The position numbers were made by a program, and so were the translations under genes. From the NCBI RefSeq assembly GCF_046119375.1, contig NW_027362773.1, positions 244,094,001 to 244,158,000 on the forward strand: DNA of 64,000 nt, given 5' to 3'. Below, one piece after another: positions 28,005-62,690 of the stretch. Positions within the stretch are counted from its first letter, which is position 1. Each line of letters begins with the position of its first letter. The DNA is from Phyllobates terribilis (taxonomy: Eukaryota). A model generated the notes under the pieces. It saw only the letters and a program-made list of their open reading frames with translations. It did not search any database and had not been told where the DNA came from.

Positions 28005-28330
28005 GAGAGCGCCGCTAGGGGTCAGTGTATATCTGGCGCTCGCTTATGTCTCCGTCGCTTTCTCGTCTGTCCCGCGCGGCTGCTCTCGTTCGTTCCTGTG
28101 TCTGTTGCTTGTGCTCGTTCCTGGAGCTGCGGAAGGGAGACCGGAGAGGTGAGTATGTGCGGCCCGGAGTCACCGCCGCCTGCCGCGGCCGGGGGAGGGC
28201 GCCCTGCGGCTGCAATCAGGGCCGTGTGTCGCCTGTAGGCTCCGTGCCTCGCTTTCCGTTGTGCTGCATGAATGGAGACAATGCGCAGCGCGGCCGGGGC
28301 CATGTGTGGAGGACCCCCACTGGGCATTAC
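28005..28330 (+). promoter_or_regulatory. CpG-island promoter and non-coding exon 1 of the unidentified plus-strand gene
   Basis: CpG-dense unique sequence with a pyrimidine-rich 5'-UTR-like tract ending in a consensus donor GAG|GTGAGT at 28149. Confidence 0.75.
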
Positions 28331-29639
28331 TCTGGGGGGGCATTCAACCCCTTAGCGCTGTTTGTGCTGTCATTTCCCTCCCTGCTGCCAGGAGCCATTA
28401 CTCTTATTTTCGGGCTTATTTATTTGCAGGACAGGTTCTAGTTTTAAGCGACACCATGTAAAGCGCTGCAAAATGGGGGGGGGAGTTCCAAGTGCACAAC
28501 CCCGCCATTGTTTTAGGGTTTGTATTGTGTTCATCTTGCAGTAAAACAAACACAAAAAATGACCTTTATTTTTATTTATTTTTTTGCTGCTACACCTCCA
28601 CCAAAAAATGCAACAGAAAGTGATCAGTACATTGTTTATATATCAAAATGGTGTCCGTAAGAGCCAGCTCAGCGCACACTAAAGTAACCGAAAGTTATGG
28701 GTCGTGGAAAGGCCTAGAAATATATTGGCAAAAAAAACAACACCATCTATGTAATCAGGTGCAAAACATTTCTGTATGGCGCCCAATCAACAACGGTGCT
28801 GCGAAACAAAATGGCTCCGTCTCACCCCAGAGGTGTCAGTGGAGACGGTCACTGAGGAAACAGGAGCAGCAGGCGACAGCGTTAGTCCTACAATGTCCTG
28901 TTGTAGGTCCAAGGTATCACTTGGATGCCAGACACATTTACTAATGGTCTTTCACTAACAGTCTTGCCCACCCTACAAGTACACTCCCCCACTACATCGG
29001 GGGCGAAACGCACCAGGAGAATTATATAGGGATATTTTCAAGTTGACAGGACTACTTGGCTACTATCCTTCTGAGGACTTGAGTCCCTACATGGGGCAAT
29101 ATTGCATATATATGAACATTTTTTATTTATTTTTTTAACATAGTTCACTGAAGGGGTTTCCTAGTCTGACCATTTTATAGATCGGGTCATTCTGGACACA
29201 GTGATACTAAATATGTGTATTTTTTCTGTTTATTTTGGGTTTTACATAAATATATGCATTTATTTGTATATATTCTTTAAGAGAGATATATAATTTTTTT
29301 TTTTTTTTTTTTCCCCCAACTCTGATTGCTGGTATAATACACTGCAATGCATTATACCTGACTGAAGCCTCTTAAGCCATGCTCTGGACATGGTCTAAGC
29401 AGGCCTCCATAGCTGAGCTGACCGATCAGGAGGTTATCATGTGACCTCCTTCTGTCATGGCGACCATTGGGCCCCTCTGCAATGACATCAGTGGGGCGCC
29501 GATCGGACAGGAGAGGGCGCCCCCTCCCTCTACATGTCTAAATGCTGCGATCACAGCATTTAGGTGGTTAAACAGCCCAGGGTGGTGCGTCACTGCTCCC
29601 AGCAGTAATAGCCGTGTCTCAGCTATCATTTAAGCTGAG

Positions 29640-30290
29640 CTCCTGGTGGCGATCGTGCGGGCATCGGTCCTGGCAGTGACAGCCATTCCTCAGCTGTCAC
29701 TTGTGCTGAGATCCTGGCGGCGATCGTGCGGGCACCGCTCCTGGCAGTGACAGCCGGGCCTCAGCTATTACTTGTGCTGCGATCCTGGCGGCGATCGTGC
29801 GGGCACCGGTCCTGGCAGTGACAGCCGGACCTCAGCTATCACTTGTGCTGAGATCCTGGCGGCGATCGTACGGGCACCGCTCCTGGCAGTGGCAGCCGGG
29901 CCTCAGCTATCACTTGTGCTGCGATTGCGTGGGCACCGGTCCTGGCAGTGACAGCCGGGCCTCAGCTATCACTTGTGCTGAGATCCTGGCGGCGATCGTA
30001 CGGGCACCGCTCCTGGCAGTGACAGCCGGGCCTCAGCTATCACTTGTGCTGCGATCCTGGCGGCGATCGTGCGGGCACCGGTCCTGGCAGTGACAGCCGG
30101 GCCTCAGCTATCACTTGTGCTGAGATCCTGGCGGCGATCGTACGGGCACCGCTCCTGGCAGTGGCAGCCGGGCCTCAGCTATCACTTGTGCTGCGATCGC
30201 GTGGGCACCGGTCCTGGCAGTGACAGCCGGGCCTCAGCTATCACTTGTGCTGAGATCCTGGCGGCGATTGTGCGGGCACCGCTCTTGTGC
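29640..30290. repeat. 71-bp GC-rich minisatellite with a 272-bp higher-order unit (71,71,71,59), embedded in a larger non-autonomous element
   Basis: Unit starts at 29708, 29779, 29850, 29921, 29980, 30051, 30122, 30193 and 30252. Confidence 0.95.
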
Positions 30291-32540
30291 TTTTATGATC
30301 GCCAGGACATACCAGTGCATCCATTTACGGGAATGCACTGCAAAATAGGATGTACTGGTATGTCCAATGTCGGGAAGGGGTTAATGTACATAGGATATAG
30401 ACTAAAACCTAACTTATCTCTCATTGCTGCTGGCACCTACTGATTAGTCAGTCATTCCTACCTTCTTCAATTAGGGTTTCTTTTACTTGTCTTGGAAAGT
30501 GGCACCAAACTTTTTTTTTTTTTTGCTATTTTCTGAGACCACAACATTTTTTTTTTTTTTTTTTTATTATTATTATTCTTCCATCAATAGAGCTGCGTGA
30601 GGGCTTATTTTTTGTTTGCCAAAGTGACGCTTTGATATCATTTTGAGGAACATTTATGAGAATAAAATGACAAAATTGGGCACATTTCAGACTTTTGAGG
30701 TTATGCTCCCATGATGAGCTTTTGCAGAGTTTTTGACGCTGCTGAATTTCTGCACCTATTATTGAAATTGGGTAACTTGTGGGTTTTGTGTGCGTTTTTA
30801 TTGCTTTTTTTTGATGCTGCGTTTTTTGTCTCTTGTTGTCATGCTTTAAATAAAGCTGCTTTGTTTTTGATACTTCCTGGTATTTGACGAAACTTTATTG
30901 ATCTACTTAGATGCGGATTACATGCGATATTGATGCGTTTCTCCACAGAGATGCACTAAAACCACACTTGCATTTTTACCTGTGGATTTTCCGTATCTCA
31001 TTTAAATCAATGGGGAAAATCCGCACAGAAAACTCAGCGTACCCCCAAGAGAAATTGTCATGCTGCGGATTTGAAACCCGCACCGCAGGTCAGTTTACTG
31101 TGAGTAAAATAAAAGCACAGTGGTCAGGAGATTTCTATAAATCCCATCCACTTTGCTGGAACTGCAAGAAAAATATACCCAGCCACAAAAATACACTAAA
31201 GTTCATTATGAGAACGTAGCCTGTTTTTACCATTTTTTTTAATCCAGATGGTCACACTGCACAAATGAGTTAATAACCGCTCCCTGTGTCTGCTTTACAT
31301 CAGCACCATTTGTCAGTGTCTTTTTATTTTGTTATGATGTTAGGTTGTTTAAAAGACATTGCAACAATTTACTGAGACCACAGGGGTGAGGGGTGGGGGT
31401 CCTGACCTGAACGAACGGTCTCATATGCCTACGAGGGTCTAAGTTTGGGTCAGGATACTCACAAATGATTCGAGCATTGTTCTCTGTGTATGGACATCTG
31501 TATTCAGCTTTACTATAAGCTTGAGCATTCATAAAGACCCAGAATTATTTATTTTGTGTTAGGGGCGCAGTGTAATGGGGTGTTTTAATAAGACTTATTA
31601 ACCTTACAATATAATGGGTTTTCTTTCTCCGAGCCTCAGCATTTCAAATACAAATCTGGTAGTATTAGAGAAGACTGGTACAAGAAGGGAGTCAATATGT
31701 CAGTCTATGTAGATATATCTTTTCCCAATATTTAACCCTCTCTGTCTAGATAAGGTAACACAGCCATGTTTACTGCATAGATAGGTGCTCTATGAAGCCC
31801 AGATAGCAAACGGTCATTTCACCGTTATTACTAAAGTACGGCACTGATAAATTCCAATTGTGGCTTTCAGTCCCCTAGTCTAATCTATTAAATATGTAAG
31901 AAGTAGTTAAAACATGTAAAACAAAGATTTAATTATTAAATTTTTTTGTTTGGTTTTTAGTTTATAGTGTTTGGCTGTCTATTTGTAGTGACCGCCGCAG
32001 GGTACTACACATCCGCCTCCTATTCCATTCAACGGGAGGCGGATGTGCAGTACCACCCAGTGGCCACTACAACTAGACGGCCAAGTTCAGCAAGTAAGTA
32101 CTTCTGGCCAGCAGCACCAATAACTGCTGATCGACAGAAAAATAAAAAAGTTATGGCTCTGGGAAGAAGGGGAGCAAAAAACTAAAATGCAGAGGCACAA
32201 AATCTCAAGGTCATGAAGAGGTTAAAGAAGGCCTCCCATCAAAATTGTTATCCTCTTACTATATTGCAGTCATCATATTATATAGCACTGTGGAGTCAGT
32301 AAGCCAAACCTCTGACTCCTCTATTTCCCTTACTCCGACTCCCACATATATTGCTTATATTTAATTGAAAAATGTATTGTAGTACAATGTGAACATCAGA
32401 CATTTAATCATTTTTATGATACAATAATAAAGATATTTAGATAGAACATAATATATATTGGAATACAACTTTAGAACACAAAAAACTGTATTAAATTGTA
32501 AATATGTAATACACTATGTAATATCGAATATATATATATA

Positions 32541-34142
32541 TATTATAGACCAAAAGTTTGGACACACCTTCTCATTTAAAGATTTTTCTATATTTTCATG
32601 ACTTTGAAAATTGTACATTCACACTGAAGGCATCAAAGCTATGAATTAACACATGTGGAATTATATACTTAACAAAAAAGTGTGAAACAACTGAAAATAT
32701 GTCTTATATTCTAGGTTCTTCAAAGTAGCCACCTTTTGCTTTGATGACTGCTTTGCACGCTCTTGGCATTCTCTTGATGAGCTTCAAGAGGTAGTCACCG
32801 GAAATGGTTTTCACTTCACAGGTGTGCCCTGTCAGGTTTAATAAGTGGGATTTCTTGCCTTATAAGTGGGGTTGGGACCATCAGTTGTGTTGTGCAGAAG
32901 TCTTGTGGATACACAGCTGATAGTCCTACTGAATAGACTGTTAGAATTTGTATTATGGCAAGAAAAAAGCAGCTAAGTAAAGAAAAACGAGTGCCCATCA
33001 TTACTTTAAGAAATGAAGGTCAGTCAGTCCAAAAAATTGGGCAAGCTTTGAAAGTGTCCCCAAGTGCAGTTGCAAAACCCATCAAGCGCTACAAAGAAAC
33101 TGGCTCACATGAGGACCGCCCCAGGAAAGGAAGACCAAGAGTCACATCTGCTTCTGAGGATAAGTTTATCCGAGTCACCAGCCTCAGAAATCGCAGGTTA
33201 ACAGCAGCTCAGACTAGAGACCAGGTCAATGCCACACAGAGTTCTAGCAGCAGACACATCTCTTCAACAACTGTTAAGAGGAGACTTTGTGCAGCAGGCC
33301 TTCATGGTAAAATAGCTGCTAGGAAACCACTGCTAAGGACAGGCAACAAGCAGAAGAGACTTGTTTGGGCTAAAGAACACAAGGAATGGACATTAGACCA
33401 GTGGAAATCTGTGCTTTGGTCTGATGAGTCCAAATTTGAGATCTCTGGTTCCAACCACCGTGTCTTTGTGCGACGCAGAAAACGGATGGACTCTACATGC
33501 CTGGTTCCCACTGTGAAGCATGGAGGAGGAGGTGTGGTGGTGTGGGGGTGCTTTGCTGGTGACACTGTTGGGGATTTATTCAAAATTGAAGGCATACTGA
33601 ACCAGCATGGCTACCACAGCATCTTGCAGCGGCATGCTATTCCATCCGGTTTGCGTTTAGTTGGACCATCATTTATTTTTCAACAGAAAAATGACCCCAA
33701 ACACACCTCCAGGCTGTGTAAGGGCTATTTGACCAAGAAGGAGAGTGATGGGGTGCTACGCCAGATGACCTGGCCTCCACAGTCACCAGACCTGAACCCA
33801 ATCAAGATGGTTTGGGGTGAGCTGGACCGCAGAGTGAAGGCAAAAGGGCCAACAAGTGCTAAGCATCTCTGGCAACTCCTTCAAGATTGTTGGAAGACCA
33901 TTTCCGGTGACTACCTCTTGAAGCTCATCAAGAGAATACCAAGAGCGTGCAAAGCAGTCATCAAAGCAAAAGGTGGCTACTTTGAAGAACCTAGAATATA
34001 AGACATATTTTCAGTTGTTTCACACTTTTTTGTTAAGTATATAATTCCACATGTGTTAATTCATAGTTTTGATGCCTTCAGTGTGAATGTACAATTTTCA
34101 AAGTCATGAAAATACAGAAAAATCTTTAAATGAGAAGGTGTG
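32541..34142 (+). mobile_element. Tc1-like transposon with DD38E (Intruder-type) spacing; right TIR runs into the N gap
   Basis: TIR ..AGACCAAAAGTTTGGACACACC inserted in a (TA)n tract. The internal inverted repeats at ~32550-32720 and ~33990-34142 match. Confidence 0.92.
32955..34001 (+). CDS. Full-length 348-aa Tc1-like transposase, predicted catalytically dead
   Basis: The frame is open, with paired-like HTH, GRPR and WSDESKF. The second D and the E are both Lys (FQQKNDPKH; PDLNPIKMVW), with 38 residues between these positions. Confidence 0.9.
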   Translation: MARKKQLSKEKRVPIITLRNEGQSVQKIGQALKVSPSAVAKPIKRYKETGSHEDRPRKGRPRVTSASEDKFIRVTSLRNRRLTAAQTRDQVNATQSSSSRHISSTTVKRRLCAAGLHGKIAARKPLLRTGNKQKRLVWAKEHKEWTLDQWKSVLWSDESKFEISGSNHRVFVRRRKRMDSTCLVPTVKHGGGGVVVWGCFAGDTVGDLFKIEGILNQHGYHSILQRHAIPSGLRLVGPSFIFQQKNDPKHTSRLCKGYLTKKESDGVLRQMTWPPQSPDLNPIKMVWGELDRRVKAKGPTSAKHLWQLLQDCWKTISGDYLLKLIKRIPRACKAVIKAKGGYFEEPRI

Positions 34143-34284
34143 NNNNNNNNNNNNNNNNNNNNNNNNNNNNNNNNNNNNNNNNNNNNNNNNNNNNNNNNNN
34201 NNNNNNNNNNNNNNNNNNNNNNNNNNNNNNNNNNNNNNNNNNNNNNNNNNNNNNNNNNNNNNNNNNNNNNNNNNNNNNNNNNNN
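34143..34284. other. Assembly gap (N run)
   Basis: Run of n bases. Confidence 1.
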
Positions 34285-34319
34285 NCAGTTTTCAACAAAA
34301 ACATACTAAATAACATTTG

Positions 34320-36861
34320 TGCAGTCTATGAATTTGTTCTAAGAAATAGTATCGCCTCCAACAGATCCTACTTCATAGATGACCTCAAATCTGACCTAAT
34401 AATTTAAAGGCTAGAGAACAACCTCTCTACACTGACTTGGGTTGGAGGCAAAGCCGTAACCACATGGGCAACATCTCTAACAATTTCCGGGTATGAAGGA
34501 ATTGCCTCGTGCACAGTCGGTTTTGATGAACGGTTTAATTTTTCTATTTCTTTGAGAGCAAGTGAAACATTTTGAACTCCTCATCTGATGAGGATGAAGA
34601 TATGGCAGCAGTAGCACTGTCAGGACCCAAGTCCTCTTGCGCCTGGCAGTCCTCCTGTAGGCCGCTCATCCTAACTGCTACCTCAGTCAGAGCTTCTTTT
34701 CCTTTAGTAAGCTGTTGATCATCAAGCAGTATACGATGACTTGGGTTCACATAAACAGCTGCCAGAAAATTTTTATTTTCCAATAGCTGTGTCTCTCTCC
34801 TTTTCATTGAAGCAGAAATGCCATCTGCGATTAAACCTCCTCTTTGGGACAGGCAAAATAGCAAGTTCTTCCACTCCCTTATGAAAATGCCAGGAGTTAA
34901 ATCCTCAGCTTGTAATTTTTTAGTCATGGTAAATGGGTGATTAAGCAATTCCTTCAATTCAGCCACCTGTGTCCATTGACCTTCATTTAGGGTTACTTGA
35001 GGGTCCGCCATATCTATAAGAAACTGTTTTAGTTCAAGCAATCGCTCAATCATTAAATAAGTGCTGCCCCACCGAGTGGCTTGATCGACAATTGCCCCTT
35101 TCCCAGCACGTCTCTTCAAGATGGAATCAGTTTTAGGGGTTCTGGTGGCAATAACCAATTTCCTCACTTTTCCAATCAGATTTCCAGCATGTCCCTCTTG
35201 CAGACTATCTCGTATTGCCAGCTGCAGCGTGTGCATAACACAGCGCATGTGATGAGTAGGAAAGTGTTTTTAAGCAGCTTCATCTATTTCTAAAGTATAA
35301 TTTTGCTGTTCTTCTGTTGTAATATCTGTTTGTTCCTCAGTTACATGAACAGCACTGTGGCCTTCCATCTCAAACATACTGAATCCTACATTTTCTTCTA
35401 GCTGTTGTTCATTACTCTCATTCATCAGTTTAATTGTACTTATCATGTTTGAAGCATTGTCTGTTACAATAGCAAGAACCTGTTCTTTCTTGAGTTCGTA
35501 ATCTTGCAGAACTTTTTCCACTAAGGCCTGGAGAAACTGGCTGGTGTGAGGAGCTTTAGGATCTTTTACTGCTAGTGTCTTGGTAACAATTTCTTCGTCA
35601 CAAACATATCGAACATTGATGGCAAAATAGTTCACTCTGTGACGTGTGCCGGCATCCATTTTAAGAAACATGAAGCGTCTTTTCAGAGTCTTTTTAAGAT
35701 CTTCCTTTTGTTTAAGGGCTTCTTCAATCACTAATTTTCTAATACTTTCTCTTTCCAGAGAAACGCTAAGTTTGCGGGCCATTTCTCCATTAAGAGCTGT
35801 AAAAGTTGGTCGTGCAAATAATGATAATGGTATACCGTCCTTCACAACAAGCTGTATGAGCTGTCTTTTAAACATATCTGCTGTCATTGTTAGAGTAAAT
35901 GCCCCGTCACACTTGTCGGGATCGTTGCAGCGTCGCTAACAATACGACCTGTCAGGGATCGTTGCTGCGTCGCTATCTGATCGCTGGTGAGCTGTCAAAC
36001 AGGCAGGCTCACCAACCATCAGGGGAGCAGCGACATCGTGGAAAGAATCTTTCCACGATGTCCTGCTCCTGGTTACGAGCCTGCTGAAGCAGGAGCAGGC
36101 TGGTAACCATGATAAACATTGGGTTACTAGGGGCACACGCGCACCTAGTAACCCGTTGTTTATCATGGTTACCACTCTGCTACGGTGAGCGGGAGGTTAC
36201 CGCTCACTTTAGCAGGCTCGTAACCATGATAAACAACTGGTTACTAGGTGCGCGTGTGCCCCTAGTAACCCGATGTTTATCATGGTTACCAGCCTGATCG
36301 CTGCTCCCGATGGTCACACACAGCGATGTGTGCTGACCAGCGGGAGAGCAACGACCAAAAAATGGTCCAGGACTCTTTGCAGCGATCAGCGACCTCACAG
36401 CAGGGGCCTGATCGCTGCAAAGTGTCACACATAGCGACATCACTGGTGAGGTCGCTGTTGCGTCACCAAAACCGTGACACAGCAGCGATCTCGCTAGCGA
36501 TTACACTGTGAGACGGGGGCTTAACTTTGTCACTTACAAGATATCTTATTAATGATGTTTGAGAGGCTCTTTCCTCCTTTGCCTGGCAGGAAGTGCTGGG
36601 CGCAGGTTTCTTGGTGCTGCTGTTATCTTTCTCAGTCACAGCTTTGAAAACTTCTGGGTGGAAGCGTTGTAAATGTCTTTTTAGATTGGAAGCTCTTGTA
36701 GGAGCATTTTTATCACTGCCTGAGTATGCACTGGTTTTGGCATCACAGCATTTGTTTTCCTCTGGGTCACTTGTCATACATTGACACCCAAAATATTTTT
36801 CATCTTGAGTCACTGTGAAATGCTCAAACACAGTTGACTACACGGGGAGCTTCTTAGACAT
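34320..36861 (-). pseudogene. hAT transposase pseudogene (BED finger, catalytic and dimerization domains)
   Basis: Fragments: BED finger (CQC..SNLKRHLQRFH), FLKMDAGT, IVTDNASNM, RCVMHTLQLAI (CxxH), TRWGSTYLM and PPTQVSVERLFS. It is disrupted by a stop, frameshifts and a MITE at 35899-36521. Confidence 0.93.
35899..36521. mobile_element. Foldback MITE, copy 2, inserted in the hAT transposase CDS
   Basis: TAA duplication (35896-35898 / 36522-36524). Removing it restores the in-frame ..VSDKV-TLTMTAD.. Same family as 8228-8840. Confidence 0.9.
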
Positions 36862-36946
36862 TTTGTAATCATATAAATTCACTCTCAAAGTATTGTCCTA
36901 TAAAATAATGTATATTATAATTCCAGCAAGAACAGGGAACCATGTA

Positions 36947-37286
36947 CAGTGGGGAAAATAAGAATTTGCAAGTTTTCCCACCTACAAAGAATAGAGCGGT
37001 CTGCAATTGTACACTTCACCTGTGAGAGTTAGACTAAAAAAAATCCAGAAAATCACATTGTATGATTTAAATTAGCATTTTATTGCATGAAATATGTATT
37101 TGATACAATAGAAAAACAGAACTTAATATTTGGTACAGAAACCTTTGTTTGCAATTACAGAGGTCAGACGTTTCCTGTAGATTCTGTTTCTCTCAGGTGA
37201 AGTGTACCTATGATTAAAAAATTCAGACCTCTCCATTCTTTGTAGGTGGGAATCGACAATGTGTCAATTACATACTTTCCCCACTG
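36947..37286. mobile_element. Tc1 internal-deletion derivative (same family as 1421-2947)
   Basis: TA-CAGTGGGG...CCCCACTG-TA. It consists only of TIR sequence shared with the 1421-2947 element. Confidence 0.9.
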
Positions 37287-37380
37287 TATAATTTTAGATA
37301 GAAATAAAACAAACTTTGCATAAATCAATAGTACAAATGACAAATATAAAGTTTGTAAAATATGTTATTAGATAGCTTTA

Positions 37381-38229
37381 GGGTATGTGCACACGATGCA
37401 GAAATGCTCAGGATTTTTTCCTGAGCGTTTCTGCATCTCTCTGGCAGGAAAAAACGCATGCGGATTGTACATGCGGATTGTACATGCGGTTTCCTGCCAG
37501 GGACATGCGGAAATGAAGCGGTCTTCACTTTCATTTCCGCATGCGGGTTGACAAGCGCTTCCCAAGCGATTTTAGCATCACTTGGAAAGTGCTTGTCAAC
37601 TTTACACTATATAAATCCATGCAACCGGCATGGATTTATATAGTGTGTGAATGTAAAAAAATAAATATATACTTTACCCTCTGATGGCCCCCGGTGTCCT
37701 GCTTCGCTCGGTCCTGGCTGCCGGCAGTGAAGACTTTAGGACCTTCCGACGTCAGCGTCTCGTGACCCGTCGCATGACTCTGACGTCAGCGAAGGTCCTT
37801 CTTCATTCAAACCCGAAGTGCCGGGAACCAAGCAGGAGCGCTGCGCGGGCCGTCAGAAGGTGAGAATATATATATTTTTTATTTTATTCTTTTTTTTTTA
37901 ATGGTACCTGGGTTTGGATGAGAGTCCTTTCATCCACACCCGGGTACCATCCGCACATTAGACCGCATGAAAAGCGCATCAACATATACAGTGATGCGGA
38001 TTCCATGCGGTCTAATGCAAGTCAATGGCGGCAAAAGAGCAGCGTTTCCGCAAAATTAATTGACATGCTGCGGATTTTTGACCGCAGCGTTTACGCACAG
38101 CACATGCGGATTTCAATTGGGGAACATTGCTGCCCTTCTACCATGCGTTTTTACTGCGTTTCCGCGGCGTTTACGCAACTGCAAAAACGCAGCGGAAACG
38201 CATGAAAAACGCATCGTGTGAACTCAGCC
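37381..38229. mobile_element. PIF/Harbinger-type MITE
   Basis: TTA-GGGTATGTGCACACGATG...CATCGTGTGAACTCAGCC-TTA (perfect 3-bp TSD). Related to 56019-56894. Confidence 0.9.
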
Positions 38230-42178: not shown

Positions 42179-42236
42179 TTATATTGGGGTCACTTACTGT
42201 ATGATTACCTAGGTCTCGCCTGGCCTCAGGTTATGT

Positions 42237-52300: not shown

Positions 52301-55300
52301 GACCCAATAACCAGGGACCTTCTCAGCCTGATAATATAAGCCTGCAGCTGTCTGCTTTACCTTTGCTGGTTACCAAAAATAAGGGAGACCCCACGTCATT
52401 TTTTTTCATTTATTAGATTAATGCATGTACGGTAAGCTACACACGCAAGGCACTAATTGTATATCTCATGGATATCTATTCTATCTATTAATCTATCTAT
52501 TTATCTTTGTGCATATTTAACACCTAAAAATCTGTAATTTCTATTCCTCTACGTTTCTCATGGATGGCAAATGGAGGACATGCGTATTGTCAAACACGGA
52601 CATGTGTGCAGCCCCATAGATTATAATTATTCGTGTGCACGTTTCTCCAGTACGTGTGAAAACAGATGCCACGTGTATCGGAAACACGGGCGTGGGAAAG
52701 GGGGCCTTAGAGTTAGCGCCATTCATACTTATCTGCATTGACTAGTCCACTGGCTTTTTTTGGGCACATAATGTGCACACGCTATTTATTTATTGCAGAT
52801 TTTTATTTTTTTGTATGTGCAAATTTGCATTTAGAAGCAAAATCCGTAACATCCACATAAATTCTGATGTGTAATCGTGCCCTATTTTAAATTTGAAGTA
52901 ACTTGTGCAAGTGAAAGGCGCTGGATAACCTCTTTTAAGTCTCTGAAAAGCTATTAGGAGGGAACATTAGCAGGAGAAAAAAATGCGTTTGATCCCTTTT
53001 ATTATATATGTCTACCATTTCAATGATGCAACCAGCCCTTTATATAAGTCATTTCACTAGGTGTGTATTGCTCTTACTCAAATTCCGAAATGCAATATTT
53101 CATAAGCTGTAAATCATTGTTTTTAGCATTAATCCATACAAGTCGAGCCAGAAAGCCTCATTCTCGGAGCAGTATAGCAGAGACTTGGAGGAGCAGAACA
53201 GGTAAGAGACCATACTTGTACATGGTGAAACTTTGTCTTACTTTAGGCCAGTCCAAATTTTACAGCATTGCAAAGGGTGAAATCCGTGACAGATCGGACG
53301 TCACTAAGCCCAATGCAGACTTCATCCCCTACATATACTCCACTGAGTGTCCACACAGTATTGTCCACATGGCTTATCAGCGAATGATTGACAGACATGC
53401 TTTCTTCATACATACATACATGATTGAAGAGTTTGTATGCCGATATATAGATTAACAGAAACAAAGGTGTAGATGCCCTTTCTATGCCAAGAAGACCCTA
53501 CTAGATTGAAAACCGCTAGGTCACATTTCTAACAACTACACTTCGCCCCCTTCAGGATTTGCAGCAAACTCTCCATCGCTGTCAGTAGTCTCCCCCTTAC
53601 CCATGTACACATCGCTTCCTACGTGCATGGTAGTAGATGTGGAGAGTTGTGAGTAATGCTTAGGAGTACTATGATACATACTGATGCCTTTTGTATTTCC
53701 AGCATTGAGGAACTCTTTGGGAAGAAACATAACTTTACTTCTGGAACAGAGGAATATTGTGAGCGATACCAGTACTCCCAAAACAGTAAGTCAGGACAGT
53801 TCTTATTTGTACGGTCAGGGCAAATTGATGTCGAGCAGTTAATAGCGAATTTTATGTTTAGCCATTGCCTGGAATAGATGATCGACATTAGTGGTTCCTC
53901 TGTAAATAATGGCCAATATGCCCCTATAGTGAAACATGACAAAACGTAAAGGTGTACACCATGTTTTTCGGACTATACAACACACCCCAGGTTTAGACAT
54001 CAGAAAATGGCAATTTCCTACTGTGTAAAACTTGAACAGGTCAATGCCACAAATTTTTGAGCTATTGGTTGGTAATAGTTAAGTGAGCTCTCTATAGTAT
54101 GCACATTATATTACATGCAGCTGTATAGCATCCACATTATCACACAAGCCTGCTCTGCGTGCAACACTGCTGTACATACAGACGCACACAACACGATTGC
54201 ACCAACAGTACATACATATACACCTTTTCAGTATGTACACGTGTATACACAAACAGCTCTGCTGCACGCACAGTACATGCACACACAGTTCATACACACA
54301 CAACACTGGAGTATGCTCATAACAGTGGCAAATAAAACTTTGGGCACCCCTGGTCAAAATTACTGTTATTGTGAACAGTTAAGCAAGGTTGAAGAAGAAA
54401 TTATCTCTAAAAGACCTAAAGTTAAAGATAACCTATTTCCTTTAGGCAAATAAATTTTATATATATAGATTTTTTGTTTTCCATCTTTTACACGGAAAAT
54501 AAGCCAATGCAAAAGTTTGTGCACCCTGCATGGCATGGTTCGTACCTAGTTAGCGCCCCCTTTTGAAAGTATCACAGCTTGTAAATGCTTTCTTTAGCCA
54601 GACAAGTTCTGGCTTGTCCCTCAGTTGTTTGAGGGATTTTCATCCATTCTTCCTTGCAAAATTCTTCCAGTTCTGTGAGATTCCTGGGTCATCTTGCATG
54701 CACTGCTATTTTGAGGTCTAGCCACAGATTTTCAATGGTGTTCAGATCAGGGGACTGTGAGGGCCACTGTAAAACCTTCAGCTTGCGCCTTTTGAGGTCG
54801 TCTATTGTGGATTTTTACGTGTGTTTTAGGATCATTATCCATTTGTAGCTGCCCTCTTCTTTTCAACGAAAGCTATTTTACAGATAGTGTTATGGTTGCA
54901 TCAAGAGTTTGTTGAAATTTCATTGAATCCATTCTTCCCTCTACCCGTGAAATATTCCCCGTGCTATTAGCTGCAACATAACCCCAAAGCATGATTAATC
55001 CACCACCATGCTTAATGGTTGGCGAGATGTTCTTTTCCTGAAATTCTGTGCTCTTTTTCTCCATGCATAACTTTGATAATTATGGCCAAAGAGTTCTTTT
55101 TTAACCTCATTGGTCCACAGGACTTTTTTCCAAAATGCATCAGGCTTGGTGATGTTCTTTTGCATACTTCTGAAGCTGAGTTTTATGGTGAGGATGCAGG
55201 AGAGGTTTTCTTCTGATGACTCTTTCATGAAAGCCATATTTGTGCAGGTGTCTCTGGAGTTGTGGTACACTGTCCTACTGTTCAGAGTCTGCTAAATGTT

Positions 55301-57430
55301 TCTGAAGGTCTTTTGCAGTCAAGTGGGGATTCTGATTTGCTTCTCTAACAATCCTACGAGCAGCTCTCACTGAAATTTTGCTTGGTCTTCCAGAGCTTAT
55401 CTTGACCTTCACTTTTCCTGGTAGCTGCCATTTCTTAATTAAATTTCAAACTGAGGAAAGGTTGTCTGTAGTAGGATGAAGTAGGTGCCGGGAAAAAATC
55501 TGCGCTTCTCCGTAGTGAAGAAATTTGACTAGAGATTGTATAATTAAACAATCTTGTAGTTTATTGCTACAAGCTACGATTACTACGCGTTTCGTGGACG
55601 TCCCGTCCACTTCCTCAGGTACATAGCTGAGGAAAGGGCAACTTGAAAACGCTTTTCTATCTTCTTATAGCCTTCTCCTGCTTTGTGGGCCTCCATCGTT
55701 TTCAGAGTGCTAGGCAGCTGCGTAGAAGAAGCCATGGCTGCTGTTTTTTGGCACAAGGTTAGAGGAGGCTGGGTTGTTATAAATCTGGGAAATTTGCATC
55801 GCCTGGCCTTTCCTAAAGATGACAGTGAACAAGCCATAACCCTAACAAGCCAATTAAGGTCTGAAACCTTGTTCAAAGTTATCTGAGCGCACACATCTCC
55901 AAGGGTGCCCAAACTTTTGCTTGGGCCCATTTTTCTTTTTTGTAATTTTTAAAATGTAAAATATGACTATATATATTTATATTGTGTGTCATCTTTAACT
56001 CTAGACCTTCTAGAGTAAGGCTGTGTGCCCACGATGCGTTTTTTATGCGTTTCCGCAGCGGCAAAAACGCTGCAGAAATTCTTAAAAAATGGTAGAAGGT
56101 CTGCCATGTCTCCCAATGATAATCCGCATGTGCTGTGCACATGCTGCGGAAATTTCCGCTACGGATTATCATTGCGGAAAAAAACGCAGCACTACCAATT
56201 ATTTTGCGGAAGCGCTGCATTTTCGCCGCCATTGACTTGCATTAGAATGCGCCAATTCCGCAAGACTGCATCTGTAGTTGCGTAATTGGCGCATTCTAAT
56301 GTGCAGATGGTACCCGGGTGTAGAAGAGAGGAGAGTCTCATCCACACCCAGGTACCATTAAAAAATCTGTAAAAAAATAAAATAAAATAAAAAATAAATG
56401 TATACTTACCTTCTGGCGGTGCGCTCCTCCTTGTTTCCCGGCACTTCGCGATGGAATGAAGGACCTGCGCTGACGTCAGAGTCATGTGACGGGTCACGTG
56501 ATGCTGACGTCGGCAGGTCCTTCAATCCACCGCTGCCGGGAGCCGGGACGGTGAAGCAAGACAGCGCGGGCCATCGGAAGGGAAGTATACATTTATTTTT
56601 TTATTTTTTGACATTCTCTAGGTCACACTATATAAATCCATGCCAGTTGTACGGATTTATATAGTGTGACCAAGTTGTCAAGCACTTTCCAAGTGATGCT
56701 AAAATCTGTTGGAAAGCGCTTGTCAACCCGCATGCGGAAATGCATGTGAAGAACTCTTCACATCCGCATGTCCCTGGCAGGAAAAACACATGTACAATCC
56801 GCGTGTACAATCCACATGCGTTTTTTTCTGCCAGGGAGATGCAGAAACGCTCAGGAAAAAATCCTGAGCATTTCTGCATCGTGGGCACATAGCCTTAAAG
56901 ATAACACACTAATTTTGACCAGGGGAGGCCAAACTTTTCCATGCCACTGTGTGATGCACTCGAACTTAGTAATTTAGTACCAGATGTAAAGTCTCTTATT
57001 CCCCAACCTTTTAAATTGCTTTCTGGTGAATGATAAAATGACTGACATGATGGATCCTCCAGCTAATAAGAACCCTTGATCATATATGATCAATATATTT
57101 TAAGATTTTATCATGCATCCCCCTTCCTCTTCCTTGCGTTCCAGTTCTGTATTGAGAGTCTGGACATTGACAAATAACCGCACCGGTGGCTTTCTATACA
57201 AGGCCCATCCTTATTTGTGGTACTTTCATATTGCATGTTCAGGTATTGGCAAAAAAAAAAAATGCACTAATGAAAAATATATATATATTTTTTTTTAACC
57301 TAGGCAAGCAGTACAACTCTGACGATCGCAGAGAGAAGCTTTATCTGAAGTTTTATCAGCAGATACAAGATGAATACCACAAGGAGAGACCTTCAGACTG
57401 TGTGATTGTTGCTATCAGCAAGGATCAGAT
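46372..57430 (+). CDS. Unidentified multi-exon protein-coding gene (N-terminal 124 codons; 3' end unresolved)
   Basis: Exons 46362-46430 (ATG 46372), 50959-50988, 53127-53201, 53703-53785 and 57304-57430. Each has a pyrimidine-rich AG acceptor and a GTAAG donor, with phases 2,2,2,1,2 and no stop. Translation: [124 protein letters not shown]. Confidence 0.8.
47356..48331. mobile_element. hAT-type MITE with a perfect 8-bp TSD, carrying a minisatellite
   Basis: CTGTAGAG on both sides (47348-47355, 48332-48339). Termini are CAGGGATGTTAAA / TTTAACATGTATG. Confidence 0.85.
47437..48260. repeat. 32-bp minisatellite, ~25 copies in variant blocks
   Basis: Unit GGAGTAGTGGGCCCTCACGCAGGCC(T/A)CCAT(G/A)C. 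Confidence 0.97.
49398..49453. promoter_or_regulatory. Paired RFX X-box motifs
   Basis: GTTGCTATGGCAAC (49398-49411) and GACACCATGGCAAC (49440-49453). Confidence 0.5.
51318..52706. mobile_element. Large Harbinger-type foldback MITE
   Basis: TTA-GGCCGCATTCACACG...CGTGGGAAAGGGGGCC-TTA. Internal inverted arms are shared with the 59.2-60.8 kb element. Confidence 0.8.
54323..56949 (-). mobile_element. Tc1 relic with long TIRs, interrupted by a MITE
   Basis: Ends CAGTGGCA..TTTGGGCACCCCTGGTCAAAAT / ATTTTGACCAGGGGAGGCCAAAC..TGCCACTG. Fragments read [25 protein letters not shown] and [12 protein letters not shown]. Confidence 0.88.
56019..56894. mobile_element. Harbinger-type MITE, inverted relative of 37381-38229
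   Basis: GGCTGTGTGCCCACGATGC...GCATCGTGGGCACATAGCC with TAA/TTA flanks. Confidence 0.85.
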
Positions 57431-58877
57431 GTAAGTCTATAAGAGCATAGCATGTACATAGGCAGGGCGGCCTCCCAGGGGCACGTCATGTCACCGCAAG
57501 CTTGCTATGGTATATTACATGTGTATTAGAGAATGGCTAGTCTTCCTTTTGCTGCTGCCAAAGGTAAGCTTTATATTTTCCCTCTGCATCTAAGGCTCAT
57601 TTTCTTTAGTTAAATACGATATAGTATAACCATATTAATATCTGTCAATCTTTTTATTATGGTGTCATTTTTTTTTTTTTTATTACTTTGGCTGTACAGT
57701 TAGATTGCAGTATAAAACCGCAAAGAGAAAGAAGTTAACCACAGAGGGATCGCCGAACAATAATAAATACTTATTGAAATATAAACCAAAACTATAATAA
57801 AAAACATTTAAAAAGCCTAAAATGTCTGTGAAAAAAATACCCTCGGACAAGCCTAAAATAAAGCTTAAGTCTGCTCTTTTAGGCTTTTTAAAAGTTTTTA
57901 TTACATTGTGGCTTATTTATTCTTGTTAGGTGATCTTTTCTCCCTATTTTTGATATGCCGAGGTTGACCCCTCTTCTTTTTTGTTAGTTTGCAGTATATT
58001 TACAAAAAGTATTAAACTAGGGATCAACTCAATAACTGGAGAGAAAAAAAATGTAAGTGTTGTGTATGGATGTCCCAGGATAAGATACATCTGTTTGGGA
58101 AAGTTGGGATAAACCACAAAAAAATAATATAATTGTTAGACACCTATGATCTATTCCTTATTTCCCGCGTCATATTTGCATCTCATGGCGGTCAAAACAT
58201 TTCATTTTAAACTTGATAAATGTCCCCCTGATACGCAGACATAAAACCGTCTATTAAACGGTAATGTGAAAATGCATTGTCTAAACAATAGAAAAACAAT
58301 GGTCAATTATTGCACAAAATACACCAAAGCTTTCATTACTAGCTGACTTATGTCACTTTTGATAGCTCATTATTTTTTATTTTATTTTTTTTTGCCTTAT
58401 ATTTTAACTATTTTCATTTATCTCCAAGATCTGTAATATTCGCATGTGATTCCACGTTCTGCTTAAGGCAAAATAGAAACTGCTCACAGGGATGTAATCC
58501 TTCACACATGACCTTTTTTAACACTTTTACTTTGGCAGGAGAAATGGCTATGAATATGCTGTTTAGTCTCAGAAGCACAGAATTTCAGAAATGCAAAAAA
58601 TGAAATTATTTTTTCTTTTATGTAATTTAATAATATTTTGAGCCCCTTGCCTTGAATGAAAGCTGTTTGGTACTTGATAGGCTCCCCCCCTTCATAATAT
58701 ACAATATATTTGCAACTATTAAATGCACTTTTACTAACAATAAATCTGGAGTATTTTTGGGGGCTAGTGTGGCCTAGCCAGTCTACCTCCACCTCTGTGC
58801 CTGTTCTTCTTGCATACATCTTTTGCAGCAACAGTGGACTAGCTGCTACTTTTTTGTTCGACACAGCCATCCCCTTA

Positions 58878-59532
58878 AGGGTTCGCTCACATCTGCAGAT
58901 ATAAAATCGCTGAGATTCTCAGCCAGAAAAGTTGGTGTCAGATTTTTTTTTTTCTCACCTATCATTCGTATGTCACACGTATGCAATCCGTATACAATGC
59001 GTTTTTAACATCAGCATTCACATACTGTAATTCTCTCTGTAATTTAAAGCTAGATTACAAGCTAATTATAGCAATCTAGTATACAAATATAGATAGAATA
59101 AATAGGATAGATGTCCTGTAGATATTTAATGTCGCAAGCCCCCTATATATAATAAACTAGCACACTTTAGTGCCTTTCATGTGGCACTAAAGACTGTTTA
59201 CCCTTATTTAACCTATTAAATAATATAAAAAAAAATTGCGTGCCCCCCCCCCCCTATTTTTAATAACAAGCAGACAGTTGGGGGCTGATATTAATAGTCT
59301 GAGAAGAGCCATGGATATTGGCCCCTTCCCAGACTAATAACATCAGCCCTCAGCCCCCTCAGAAATGGCGCATCCATTAGATTCACCAATTCGGGCGCTT
59401 GGTCTTGGCAATCAGGGTAATAATTCTGAGGTTAATGTCAGCTTTGTAATGTGTCCTGACATCAAGCCCAGGGGTTAGTAATGAGGAAGTGTCTATCAGA
59501 CGCCCCCAAATACTAACCCCGTAAGTTAAAAG

Positions 59533-59604
<72 letters not shown>

Positions 59605-61020
59605 CTTGTAAAAAGCACTCCTGACAATTACCCTCTTTTACCAATTTAATTCCATTTAAAAGGTAATCTAAAGGGTCTGCTGAGATCCATAATATGGACG
59701 TCCCACGACGATCCCCGACTTTGCTACGTCCGCAGGCTGTGATGAGCGATGACATCAGTAACGTGACCTCTCACCACGGCCGCCAGAACACACTGAGAGT
59801 ATATTGAGAACCGGCGCTAGCGAAGAACCGTGAGTTCATTACGGTTACCACAGGTCACTGCCGCCGTTTCTCACGGTAACCTCTGTGTGAGCTACCAGCT
59901 CTGAACTGCCGTGAACTCCGTAAGGTTACAGCAGTTCACAGCTGGCAGGCTCACGCTGTCCTCTGCAGCTCACACAGAGGTTACCAGGAGAACCGCCGGC
60001 TGGCTGTGACCTGCAGTAACCTTAATGACCTCACCGCTCTTCACTGCCGCTGGTTCTCATGATACTCTGTGGGTTCCGGCGGCCGTGATGAGCAGTAATG
60101 TTACTGATGTCACCACTCATCACAGCCTCTGAATGTGGTAGAGTCGTGGGATGTCCATATTGATTACGGCAGATCCTTTTGGATTACTTTTTTTAAAATG
60201 GTGTAAAAGAGGGTAATCGTCAAGGAGTGCTTTTTACAAATAAAGGACTTTTTTGTGTTTAATTTATGGGGTTAGTAATGGGGGTGTCTGACAGACGCCT
60301 CTCCATTACTAACCCCTGGACTTGATGTCAGCACACATTACAAAGCTGACATCAACCCCAAAACCTTTACCCAGATTGCCAACACACTAGGGTAATTTGG
60401 AAGAGCCGAGGCTAGGTGCCAGAATTGGAGCATCTAATGGATGCACAATTTCTAGGGCGGCTGAGGGCTGGTGTTAGTCTGGGAAGGGGCCAATATCCAT
60501 GGCCCTTCCTAAACTATTAATATCCGCCCCCAGCTGTCTGCTTATTAAAAATAGGGGGGACCCCACATCATATTAATTTTTTTGGGGGGTACCCACTTCT
60601 TAATAACCAGTAAAGGCTAATCAGACTTCTGCGGGCTGATATTTGTAGTCTGGGAAGCTACAAAGATATTTGCCCCTTCCCAGAATAATAACACCAGCTC
60701 ACAGCGGTCTTCTTTCCCTCAGCTGGTTAGTAAAAATAAAGGGGACCCCACGCCATTTTTTTTTTTTCATTCATTTATTAGCTAAATTCAAGTACAGAAA
60801 ACTACACACGCAAAGCAGTAATTCTATATCTCATTGACCTCTTTCTATCTATTCTGATAGTTTACGCTGTGAATTTACTGTACTTGGCTGATGAAATGTC
60901 TGGTTTCCCTTGAGATGTGTGTGTAAAAATCGGACAGCACACTCATGGTTCATGTGCTGTGGAATTATTTTTTTTTGCACCCATTGACGTTCATTGAGTC
61001 TTGGCCGTTTTACGCTGCCA
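58878..61020. mobile_element. Large foldback non-autonomous element (arms ~59250-59750 and ~60100-60760), containing a (CA)n tract at 59536-59601
   Basis: Long inverted arms, e.g. CCATGGATATTGGCCCCTTCCCAGACT / AGTCTGGGAAGGGGCCAATATCCATGG. Same family as 51318-52706. The outer boundaries are approximate. Confidence 0.7.
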
Positions 61021-61190
61021 TACGCAGCATGCTGTTTTTTCTTTCCCTCACCCCAATTCCAGGTGAGGAAGAGCTCGCAGATGAACACTGCCTTATTTTA
61101 TTTTTTTCTTCCCTTGTTCTCTCTGATTTTATATGCAGATGTGAGCAAACCTTTAGAGGGAGTCTTTCAGCAGTCATCCTCTACTTCTTG

Positions 61191-62050
61191 AAACCTATCT
61201 GCCGACCATATGATACATGGTCCGCAAATCCCTGTAATGAAAGCAAAACCAACAAGAGAGTATTTTTGGAGAGAAAAATTGGAATATAAAAAGAGAAAAA
61301 GATTTTCTCCAATAGGGATAATTGTCTGTCTACTTGTAGGTACTCTCCAAAAGAACACACATAAGGGATTTTAATTATAAATATATACTTTATTGAAAAA
61401 TGTATTAATGTAATAAAATTTCAGAGCAGCTCTGCACCCTTAGCATTCCTTTCCACGCTGCCTCTGACTTTATCGATATGACCCAAGGTAATGGAAGTAT
61501 AATGTTATTAGTTATGATTTGTTGATGGAACATCTCATAGTGCAATTATTATGCTTATAGTTTACTTTTTTGCACTTAATTGCTCTGATACCTTACTATA
61601 TATACTTAATATACAGGGCCATTCGTTATATGCTATATATTTCCTTATCTTCACTAGCTTCCCTCATGGGATTTCTAACTGAAATTATCTGGCATGGCCA
61701 GTGCTAGAATCTCCATTTCAAGTCATTGGCAGTATACTAACATCTGTTATACATTGAATGCTATTTTGGGGTGTTAGTCTCTTTGCAGTATTATTCATCT
61801 CACTCTGCCTTCCTCTGGTTGTCCCTCCCCCCTCCCTCCTTTGTTGCCCTCATTCTGTCCTTTCTTTATTTATATTGATTGAAATGTTATTACATTAATA
61901 CATTTTTCAATAAAGTATATATTTATAATTAAAATCCCTTATGTGTGTTCTTTTGGAGAGTACCTACAAGTACAATTATCCCTATTGGAGAAAAACTTTT
62001 TCTCTTTTTATATTCCAATTTTTCTCTCCAAAAATACTCTTTTGTTGGTT
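61191..62050. mobile_element. 860-bp insertion with a 15-bp TSD and asymmetric ~175-bp inverted repeats (Penelope-like or other TPRT product)
   Basis: ATCCTCTACTTCTTG at 61176-61190 and 62051-62065. Inverted arms are 61247-61423 and 61880-62050. Confidence 0.7.
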
Positions 62051-62690
62051 ATCCTCTACTTCTTGGCCTGTATGCACTCGCTTATCGCCTCTAAAGTGAC
62101 CCGGCTGCTGCATGCCCAAAGCATTTAATAGTCCGGGCTTATGTTTCCAGTAAGACAGGAGAAGAGCATGGCCGGAGGCTTTAAAGGGAATGTGTTTTAA
62201 ATCGGGTTTTTATGTTAAATATTCTCTTCTAGACTCACACTTCCATTTGTTTCAGGAAATCTTCATGCACATTAGCAGCAATAGTCTGACTCAGACCACA
62301 TGTTTTGTGTTAACGCATCTAATGAGTGTGTGCAAAGGCTATTGTGAAGGGAGAGGGATCAGCTTTGACACCTCTTATTGTGATTGGTGGATCTGGTTAT
62401 CAGCTGTGTATAGAGGCGTTACCTGTCATTGTAATCCTGTCTCTGGTGATAATGAGCCTGATGAAAACTCTTCCTAAAAGGACAAGAAGTATGGAAGTAA
62501 CTTAAAAGCCTGATCTAAACACTAGGTATTATTTTGATGAGACATTTCGTTGTAAGTGTCTCATGAGACACCTTAGACCCAGCTGATGCCGAGAACACAC
62601 AGATGGGAGCTGTTGTAGTTAGGTAAGCTTGTGCCACAGCAGAATGGAAGTAGTCACAATGTCTGACCTCCTCTTACAGGTAACTGACTA

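What the first reader, a model, noticed from the sequence alone, without database searches (positions are those of the whole stretch)
28005..62130. Unrecognised multi-exon gene built from micro-exons and largely missed by the ORF track
A CpG-island non-coding exon is followed by an 18-kb TE-filled intron and five short exons (69, 30, 75, 83 and 127 nt). These have consensus splice sites whose phases chain into a stop-free 124-codon frame, which is unlikely by chance. I do not recognise the protein. It is neither ZNF423 nor HEATR3, the recalled human neighbours of CNEP1R1, so it may be lineage-restricted, fast-evolving or lost in mammals. The 3' end is ambiguous, with candidate exons at 57530-57563, 58429-, 61028-61062 and 61139-.
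Basis: partly seen in the sequence, partly recalled or inferred. Interest (0 to 1): 0.75.

Follow-up and report, generated by a model that had tools for sequence, protein, structure and literature searches.

The report
Frog NCOA5-like gene, 5' part
The chain of tiny exons is real and expressed, but it is the first quarter of an already annotated vertebrate gene, a paralogue of nuclear receptor coactivator 5, whose remaining exons lie beyond the window.

Summary
Five coding exons (69, 30, 75, 83 and 127 nt) lie at 46362-46430, 50959-50988, 53127-53201, 53703-53785 and 57304-57430, after a short CpG-rich 5' exon that ends at 28148. RNA contigs from four runs in two studies cover only the exons and show the 53201|53703 junction. 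Full-length mRNA contigs of another frog align to the window at exactly these boundaries. The exon peptides and split codons are 100% identical to residues 1-124 of RefSeq XP_073515474.1 (Phyllobates terribilis, 475 aa). That protein belongs to the "nuclear receptor coactivator 5-like" group, annotated from sharks to many mammals. The gene is therefore not unrecognised, lineage-restricted or lost in mammals as a whole. No bird, primate or rodent appeared among the 120 best hits. None of the proposed 3' exons is used by the main transcript, and the coding region runs about 16 kb past the window end. The assembly gap sits in intron 1 beside a Tc1/mariner copy and does not affect the frame. The full protein has a folded core like the solved NCOA5 anticodon-binding-like domain, plus an invariant LLFLL box. 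The scan's earlier notes held nothing on this gene. Interest is low.

The parts
28005..28148 (+). Exon 1 (5' UTR). The 3' end is fixed at 28148 (donor GAG|gtgagt). The 5' end (TSS) is not determined; at least 45 nt are in the RNA contig of run X2.
   Evidence: The CpG-rich 300 bp has GC 0.66 and o/e 1.02. The 14 nt before exon 2 in the other frog's mRNA match 28135-28148 at 12/14, the only match in the window. The X2 contig has 302 nt before exon 6, which is 257 nt of exons 2-5 plus 45 nt.
28149..46361 (+). Intron 1, 18,213 nt and TE-filled. It contains the assembly gap 34143-34285, a Tc1/mariner transposase ORF at 32955-34001 (+), a hAT-like remnant at 35270-35887 (-), and LINE endonuclease and RT ORFs at 42318-44882 (-).
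   Evidence: Pfam hits HTH_Tnp_Tc3_2/DDE_3, DUF659, RVT_1 and Exo_endo_phos_2. Gap flanks were read. The other frog's mRNA goes straight from the exon 1 end to exon 2.
46362..46430 (+). Exon 2 (69 nt), start codon at 46372. It encodes residues 1-19 plus 2 nt of codon 20.
   Evidence: Exact match to P0075 residues 1-19. The mRNA contigs L002-L004 align to 46369-46431.
50959..50988 (+). Exon 3, a 30-nt micro-exon (KPIWIPRLL plus split codons). It is an ancient, alternatively included cassette.
   Evidence: Exact match to P0075 residues 21-29. The full 30 nt are present in other-frog mRNA at 93% identity. It is present in turtle, coral snake, gar and coelacanth models, and skipped in alligator, cobra, Hyperolius and opossum models. 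It is also skipped in Dendropsophus isoform X3 versus X1/X2.
53127..53201 (+). Exon 4 (75 nt), residues 31-54.
   Evidence: Exact match to P0075. RNA contig depth and the joint 53201|53703 appear in 4 runs. mRNA alignment.
53703..53785 (+). Exon 5 (83 nt), residues 56-82, with the conserved ERYQYSQ motif.
   Evidence: Exact match to P0075. RNA joint and depth. Conserved in the genomic contig L001 of another frog, with an in-frame 3-nt deletion.
57304..57430 (+). Exon 6 (127 nt), residues 84-124. It encodes helix 88-109 and the first beta-strand (115-119) of the anticodon-binding-like domain.
   Evidence: One contig per run covers 57304-57431: no differing letters in X1-X3, one in X5. phmmer hits NCOA5-like proteins. 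Exon identity to L001 is about 95%, against about 75-80% in the flanks. Secondary structure from the AF2 model.
57431..64000 (+). Intron 6, incomplete; it runs off the window. The next exon (66 codons after a leading G) is not in the window.
   Evidence: All four RNA contigs carry 199 nt after exon 6 that do not lie in 57432-59099. No motif of the downstream protein is found anywhere in the window. The gene range of 33.6 kb in the assembly puts the CDS end about 16 kb past 64000.
57530..57563 (+). At most it is a minor, frame-shifting alternative cassette; it is not part of the main mRNA.
   Evidence: It begins with A, whereas the main contig continues with G. Depth in the bin 57500-57699 is about 30 in X1-X3 and 0 in X5. 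The splice sites and downstream flank are conserved in L001, but the exon body is only 22/34 identical. 34 nt is not a multiple of 3.
61242..62055 (.). Inverted repeat (arms 61242-61423 and 61880-62055). It is not an exon.
   Evidence: Arms of 93 and 84 nt are 99% and 95% complementary. There is no homology to the protein.

Best explanation
The finding is the 5' part (exons 1-6) of the frog orthologue of 'nuclear receptor coactivator 5-like' (NCOA5L). This is an old vertebrate paralogue of NCOA5. Here it lies head-to-head with CNEP1R1 and continues about 16 kb beyond the window. Shown: the exon structure, the splicing, the expression, and the identity to RefSeq XP_073515474.1 residues 1-124. 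The window encodes three things. The first is a predicted-disordered N-terminal region with the conserved MSSW start and ERYQYSQ motif. The second is an alternatively spliced 30-nt micro-exon. The third is the helix and first strand of a class-II-aaRS anticodon-binding-like domain. Also shown, for the full-length annotated product: a folded core at residues 87-284 that superposes on the solved human NCOA5 domain, followed by a helix carrying an invariant LLFLL (LxxLL-type) box and a disordered C-terminus of KPPPLLPTP-type proline-rich repeats. Inferred, not shown: like NCOA5, the protein acts in the nucleus as an adaptor. It would dock on nuclear receptors or other transcription factors through the LxxLL helix and recruit partners through the disordered ends, with no tRNA synthetase activity. 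Identity confidence is about 0.95. Confidence in the coregulator mechanism is about 0.4.
For: The exons and their phases were located. RNA contigs cover exons only, and the GT..AG joint 53201|53703 appears in 4 runs from 2 studies. Spliced alignment of mRNA contigs L002-L004 falls at exactly the five exon blocks. The exon 1 end is supported. phmmer with exon 6 alone found 12 hits: 10 named NCOA5 or NCOA5-like, 1 uncharacterised snake protein, 1 not looked up. The five exon peptides and four split codons match P0075 residues 1-124 exactly. There are 294 homologues, and the 120 best shown are named NCOA5-like or uncharacterised across vertebrates. The PDB profile search hits 1V95 (human NCOA5 domain) at E=2.6e-38. 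The AF2 model is confident over 87-284. Foldseek's top hit is 1v95 (TMt 0.78, rmsd 1.4 A), followed by ThrRS, HisRS and ProRS anticodon-binding domains. Pfam gives borderline HGTP_anticodon hits only. The H-L-L-F-L-L columns are invariant or nearly so across 29 species. NCOA5's LxxLL and corepressor motifs and its ER and NR1D2 binding are described in PMC5746116.
Against: No experiment on NCOA5L was found in the paper library. Only one preprint mentions it, in passing. The equivalence of LLFLL with NCOA5's functional LxxLL box rests on my memory of the NCOA5 sequence, not on an alignment made here. From memory, NCOA5L lacks NCOA5's Arg/Asp-rich N-terminus and its C-terminal region, so its partners may differ. 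The runs are labelled only 'RNA? (a guess)', and their tissue is unknown. I did not see reads on exons 1-3 of this species directly, because only one read-laying run of 6 kb was allowed.
Confidence: 0.93

Rival explanations
1. One reading: a self-contained, previously unrecognised small gene of about 124-150 codons, built from micro-exons, ending inside the window at one of the candidate 3' exons, and lineage-restricted or lost in mammals.
For: The five exons chain into a stop-free 124-codon frame. The exon peptides have no Pfam hit. The candidate 34-nt exon has conserved splice sites in another frog.
Against: The exons equal residues 1-124 of a 475-aa annotated protein. The RNA contigs continue for 199 nt (a leading G plus 66 codons of the next annotated exon) that are not in the window. 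Orthologues occur from sharks to mammals. Candidate 61139- overlaps an inverted repeat. None of the four candidates begins with the G seen in the contigs.
Confidence: 0.02
2. A decaying or non-functional copy (unitary pseudogene or transcribed relic) of NCOA5L in this frog.
For: The gene has been lost in several amniote lineages: no bird, primate or rodent appears among the best 120 hits. Its introns are swollen by TEs.
Against: The reading frame through all window exons is intact and identical to the RefSeq model. Identity to other hyloid frogs is 88-96%. The exon is more conserved than its flanks. Spliced RNA is abundant, with contig depth of about 500-670 in runs of 150-200 Mb.
Confidence: 0.03
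3. The spliced contigs come from a processed retrocopy elsewhere in the genome, sequenced as DNA, rather than from RNA of this locus.
For: The runs are labelled RNA only as a guess. Anomaloglossus has three NCOA5L-like loci.
Against: Exon depth of 90-670 against an intron depth of about 0-2 in the same runs does not fit genomic DNA. Exon 6 has no differing letter in the contigs of X1-X3 and one in X5. The contigs stop exactly at a junction where annotated isoforms diverge, as expected for a transcript graph.
Confidence: 0.02

Closest known systems
NCOA5-like (NCOA5L) orthologues, e.g. RefSeq XP_073515474.1 / XP_073515473.1 (Phyllobates terribilis), XP_056382308-10 (Hyla sarda), X. tropicalis LOC100145527. 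The coelacanth and ropefish entries are titled Si:ch211-216l23.2 in UniProt, a clone-style name I take to be zebrafish (not checked).
   Same: Residues 1-124 are identical to the P. terribilis protein and 88-96% identical to other hyloid frogs over the full length. Exon boundaries are the same as in other-frog mRNA. Alternative use of the 30-nt micro-exon is also the same.
   Different: Nothing of substance: this is that gene. Only its first six exons are in the window.
NCOA5 / CIA (coactivator independent of AF-2), human, with its solved domain PDB 1V95
   Same: Both have a central anticodon-binding-like alpha/beta domain (profile E=2.6e-38; TMt 0.78, rmsd 1.4 A). In both, this is followed by a helical region with an LxxLL-type box. 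NCOA5 binds ER alpha/beta and NR1D2 and acts as both coactivator and corepressor (PMC5746116).
   Different: Identity within the domain is only 34%, so this is a paralogue, not an orthologue. The N-terminus here is a short disordered MSSW...ERYQYSQ region rather than NCOA5's long Arg/Asp-rich region (the latter from my memory). The C-terminus is made of KPPPLLPTP-type repeats. The genomic neighbour is CNEP1R1, not the 20q13 neighbourhood of NCOA5 (my knowledge).
Anticodon-binding domains of class II aminoacyl-tRNA synthetases (ThrRS, HisRS, ProRS; Pfam PF03129 HGTP_anticodon)
   Same: The fold is the same (Foldseek E 6.5e-06 to 1e-04). Pfam scores are borderline at 19.5-23.6 bits against a cutoff of 21.
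   Different: There is no catalytic core or any other synthetase domain. Identity is 11-18%. tRNA binding is untested.

Membership tests
NCOA5-like (NCOA5L) orthologue group | Colinear, high-identity match of every coding exon to annotated NCOA5L proteins, including the MSSW N-terminus and the ERYQYSQ motif | tested here: met
   Exon peptides match P0075 residues 1-19, 21-29, 31-54, 56-82 and 84-124 exactly, and the split codons give K, D, S, S as in P0075. In the 29-species alignment, M1 and S2 are invariant, and S3, W4, E75, R76, Y77, Y79 and S80 are nearly so.
NCOA5-like (NCOA5L) orthologue group | Central anticodon-binding-like domain homologous to the NCOA5 domain | tested here: met
   Tested on the full annotated product P0075 and alignment A3: 1V95 at E=2.6e-38 and TMt 0.78. 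The window itself holds only the leading helix and first strand.
NCOA5-like (NCOA5L) orthologue group | LxxLL-type box after the domain, and proline-rich LLPTP repeats at the C-terminus | tested here: met
   H252, L253, F255 and L256 are invariant, L254 and L257 nearly so, and the KPPPLLPTP columns are conserved. These parts are encoded beyond the window.
NCOA5-like (NCOA5L) orthologue group | Conserved position next to CNEP1R1 | tested here: inconclusive
   Here CNEP1R1 is on the minus strand (coding exons 10642-17303) and NCOA5L on the plus strand from about 28005. A caecilian model starts with the CNEP1R1 N-terminus, which suggests adjacency there too. No other genome's neighbourhood was read.
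NCOA5 proper (orthologue of human NCOA5) | High identity to the human NCOA5 domain and the NCOA5-type N- and C-terminal regions | tested here: not met
   Identity to 1V95 is only 34%, whereas the frog protein is 54-64% identical overall to the mammalian NCOA5L proteins. RefSeq names the group 'NCOA5-like' or 'uncharacterized'.
Nuclear receptor coregulators (functional class) | Physical binding to a nuclear receptor and an effect on transcription | not testable with these tools
   Only the motif and the homology to NCOA5 are available. No paper on NCOA5L function was found.
Class II aminoacyl-tRNA synthetases | Catalytic core with motifs 1-3 | tested here: not met
   Pfam finds only the borderline HGTP_anticodon domain in the full-length orthologues. 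The AF2 model has no other folded domain.

The most novel reading that the evidence does not exclude
NCOA5L would be a functionally distinct, never-studied coregulator, overlooked because it appears to be missing from the usual model mammals and birds. Its 30-nt micro-exon (KPxWIPRLLD) has been conserved since before the split of ray-finned and lobe-finned fishes, and is either included or skipped in annotated isoforms. It could act as a regulated switch that adds a short interaction or localisation motif to the disordered N-terminus. The gene could be a 2R ohnologue of NCOA5 (16q12-like versus 20q13-like neighbourhoods) with repeated independent losses in amniotes.
Probability: 0.3. Interest if true: 0.35.

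Novelty: already known. Interest (0 to 1): 0.15.

Why it matters
It also shows that "I do not recognise the protein" did not mean the gene is new. The gene is in RefSeq for this very species and is annotated across vertebrates. What remains of biological interest is modest. NCOA5L is a conserved, expressed NCOA5 paralogue with no experimental literature. It is patchily retained in mammals and apparently absent from birds. It carries an ancient alternatively spliced micro-exon. A frog or fish knock-out would be the natural way to learn what it does.

Tried and rejected
1. Pfam on exon peptides C, D and E gave no hits; the peptides are too short and mostly disordered.
3. The word search, using the 82-aa stop-free ORF around exon 6 with region 42-82, found only a 52-aa genomic fragment of another frog. 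The length window hid the 475-aa relatives.
4. I looked for a terminal exon in 57431-63800 that starts with G and has a poly(A) signal about 170-190 nt downstream. There were six candidates. 57595 fails on RNA depth, and none of the six holds a motif of the downstream protein.
5. The acceptor at about 62257 (tgtttcag|G), seen by eye, was considered as the next exon. It was rejected because no downstream protein motif occurs in the window.
7. The look-up of encoding contigs for P0075 found nothing on record. The longer isoform gave the gene range but no DNA, so the exons beyond the window were not read.
Full-length analyses used database proteins (P0075 and alignment A3).
9. I did not read or try to fill the assembly gap.
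10. I did not compare with human sequence.
Full report
**Where the exons are.** I scanned 44-62 kb of the + strand for AG...GT intervals of those lengths with an open frame. This gave one consistent series:

| Exon | Coordinates | Length | Note |
|---|---|---|---|
| 2 | 46362-46430 | 69 nt | ATG at 46372 |
| 3 | 50959-50988 | 30 nt | micro-exon |
| 4 | 53127-53201 | 75 nt | |
| 5 | 53703-53785 | 83 nt | |
| 6 | 57304-57430 | 127 nt | |

All five have pyrimidine-rich acceptors and gtaag-type donors.

**The assembly gap.** The gap at 34143-34285 lies in intron 1 (28149-46361), right after a Tc1/mariner transposase ORF. It is 12 kb upstream of the start codon. Whether its flanks are continuous or in frame has no bearing on the coding sequence. 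I did not try to fill it.

- Contig depth was 90-670 on exons 4, 5 and 6 and essentially zero in the introns between them. TE copies at 54300-56900 had unrelated, very high depth.
- All four runs show a GT..AG joint at 53201|53703.
- One contig per run carries exon 6; no letter differs in X1-X3 and one in X5. Each runs one letter further, a G, to 57431. Each then has 199 more nt that do not lie in 57432-59099.
- The X2 contig has 302 nt before exon 6. That equals the 257 nt of exons 2-5 plus 45 nt of a 5' exon.

**What the protein is.** Pfam saw nothing in the exon peptides. A word search through the stop-free ORF around exon 6 found only a genomic fragment of another frog. In that contig (L001), exons 5 and 6 are conserved well above their flanks, and their intron is about 0.45 kb instead of 3.5 kb.

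The exhaustive phmmer search with exon 6 alone (41 aa) gave 12 hits at E up to 1e-3. The ten I looked up are proteins of 219-600 aa. Nine are named nuclear receptor coactivator 5 or NCOA5-like (or carry the Si:ch211-216l23.2 title), from frogs, crocodilians, turtles, a cobra, coelacanth, bichir, sharks and lamprey. The tenth is an uncharacterised coral-snake protein.

One 90% cluster is represented by XP_073515474.1 of Phyllobates terribilis (P0075, 475 aa). The five exon peptides sit at residues 1-19, 21-29, 31-54, 56-82 and 84-124 of it without a single difference. The four split codons give its residues 20, 30, 55 and 83. Residue 125 is Met, as the trailing G predicted. All full-length work used database proteins.

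**Independent confirmation of the splice pattern.** Three complete mRNA contigs of another frog (L002-L004) align to the window in exactly five blocks with the same borders, including the whole 30-nt micro-exon. The 14 nt that precede exon 2 in those mRNAs match 28135-28148 at 12 of 14 positions. This is the only such match in the window, with 0.16 expected by chance. It sits directly at a GAG|gtgagt donor inside a 300-bp stretch with GC 0.66 and CpG o/e 1.02. Exon 1 therefore ends at 28148. Its start is not fixed.

**The 3' end.** The 199 nt after exon 6 equal a G plus the 66 codons from residue 126 to the point where the annotated isoforms of this and related frogs diverge. That explains why all assemblies stop there. 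No motif of the downstream protein occurs anywhere in the window. The gene range recorded for the longer isoform is 33.6 kb. If that range is counted from the start codon, the stop codon lies about 16 kb past position 64000.

- None starts with G.
- 61139- overlaps a 93+84-nt inverted repeat.
- 58429- and 61028- have no support.
- 57530-57563 keeps its splice sites in L001 and lies in a bin with depth of about 30 in three runs. Its body is poorly conserved and its 34 nt would shift the frame. At best it is a minor cassette.

**What the protein looks like.** I aligned 29 orthologues.
- A profile search of the PDB hits 1V95, the solved anticodon-binding-like domain of human NCOA5, at E=2.6e-38.
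- An AlphaFold model of P0075 is confident only for residues 87-284: a helix, a five-stranded alpha/beta domain, a long helix and two shorter ones. Residues 1-86 and 285-475 are predicted disordered.
- Foldseek puts 1v95 first (TMt 0.78, rmsd 1.4 A, 34% identity), followed by ThrRS, HisRS and ProRS anticodon-binding domains.
- Pfam sees only a borderline HGTP_anticodon match and no synthetase core.
- The helix at 248-258 carries H-L-L-F-L-L, invariant or nearly so in all 29 species. The C-terminus is built of KPPPLLPTP-like repeats.

So the window encodes the disordered N-terminus plus the first helix and strand of the domain.

**How it most likely works.** NCOA5 binds ER alpha/beta and NR1D2, has LxxLL and corepressor motifs, and acts both ways (PMC5746116). 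By homology, I infer that NCOA5L is a nuclear adaptor that uses its LxxLL-type helix and disordered ends in a similar way. This is inference only. [quoted passage not shown]

**Distribution.** A search with the turtle orthologue found 294 homologues. The 120 best include caecilians, salamanders, many frogs, squamates, tuatara, turtles, alligator, gar, bowfin and coelacanth. Among mammals they include marsupials, monotremes, Tamandua, alpaca, mole, shrew, pangolin and many carnivores. No bird, primate or rodent was among them. Birds would have been expected near the alligator scores. The gene is thus old and patchily lost, not lost in mammals as a whole. A 2R-ohnologue origin is my inference from remembered paralogous neighbourhoods and was not tested.

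**The micro-exon.** The KPxWIPRLLD exon appears in frog, turtle, coral snake, gar and (weakly) coelacanth proteins. It is absent from alligator, cobra, opossum, axolotl and Hyperolius models. RefSeq lists both forms for Dendropsophus. Skipping stays in frame here: AA+C gives Asn.

**Verdict.** The gene is already known as an annotated but unstudied NCOA5 paralogue. The scan's earlier notes held nothing on it.

Noticed in passing
window 28003-28148: An ATG at 28003 is in frame with the main start codon through exon 1 and the first 10 nt of exon 2, with no stop (the last in-frame stop is at 27946). If transcription starts upstream of it, a 52-codon hydrophobic N-terminal extension could be translated. 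Orthologue models carry unrelated upstream extensions, so it is probably 5' UTR or a uORF-like start.
   Followed up: partly
P0029 (Rhinatrema bivittatum isoform X3), versus window 17280-17303 (-): The caecilian model begins with the CNEP1R1 N-terminus (MNSLEQAE...) fused in frame to MSSWVKV. This implies same-strand adjacency or read-through there. In this window CNEP1R1's first coding exon is on the opposite strand, at 17303.
   Followed up: no
P0157, P0082, P0158 (dendrobatid isoform X1; encoded beyond the window): The longer isoform inserts 63 residues in the middle of the anticodon-binding-like domain. The insertion is a near-copy of a downstream proline-rich segment, so it looks like an exon duplication. 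The RNA contigs of all four runs end exactly at this junction.
   Followed up: partly
window 55900-56900: Repeat copies here have contig depths of about 5,800-96,000 in runs X1-X3 but at most about 1,000 in X5. This suggests a very highly expressed or very abundant repeat family in organism A only.
   Followed up: no
window 32955-34001 (+): An uninterrupted 348-aa Tc1/mariner transposase ORF (HTH plus DDE_3 hits) ends 140 nt before the assembly gap. A second Tc1-like copy lies at 63363-63983 (-).
   Followed up: partly
window 42318-44882 (-): A LINE with endonuclease and reverse-transcriptase ORFs (363 and 474 aa) sits in intron 1.
   Followed up: partly
window 53786-57303 versus L001:203-646: The intron between exons 5 and 6 is 3.5 kb here but only about 0.45 kb in another frog. 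The difference coincides with the TE block at 54300-56900.
   Followed up: partly
P0079, P0140, P0141 (Anomaloglossus baeobatrachus): Three NCOA5L-like proteins lie on three different large contigs. One has a foreign C-terminus and one is flagged low quality. They may be duplicates or retrocopies in that frog.
   Followed up: no
window 59537-59602: A (CA)n microsatellite of about 65 nt lies inside repeat-rich intron 6.
   Followed up: no
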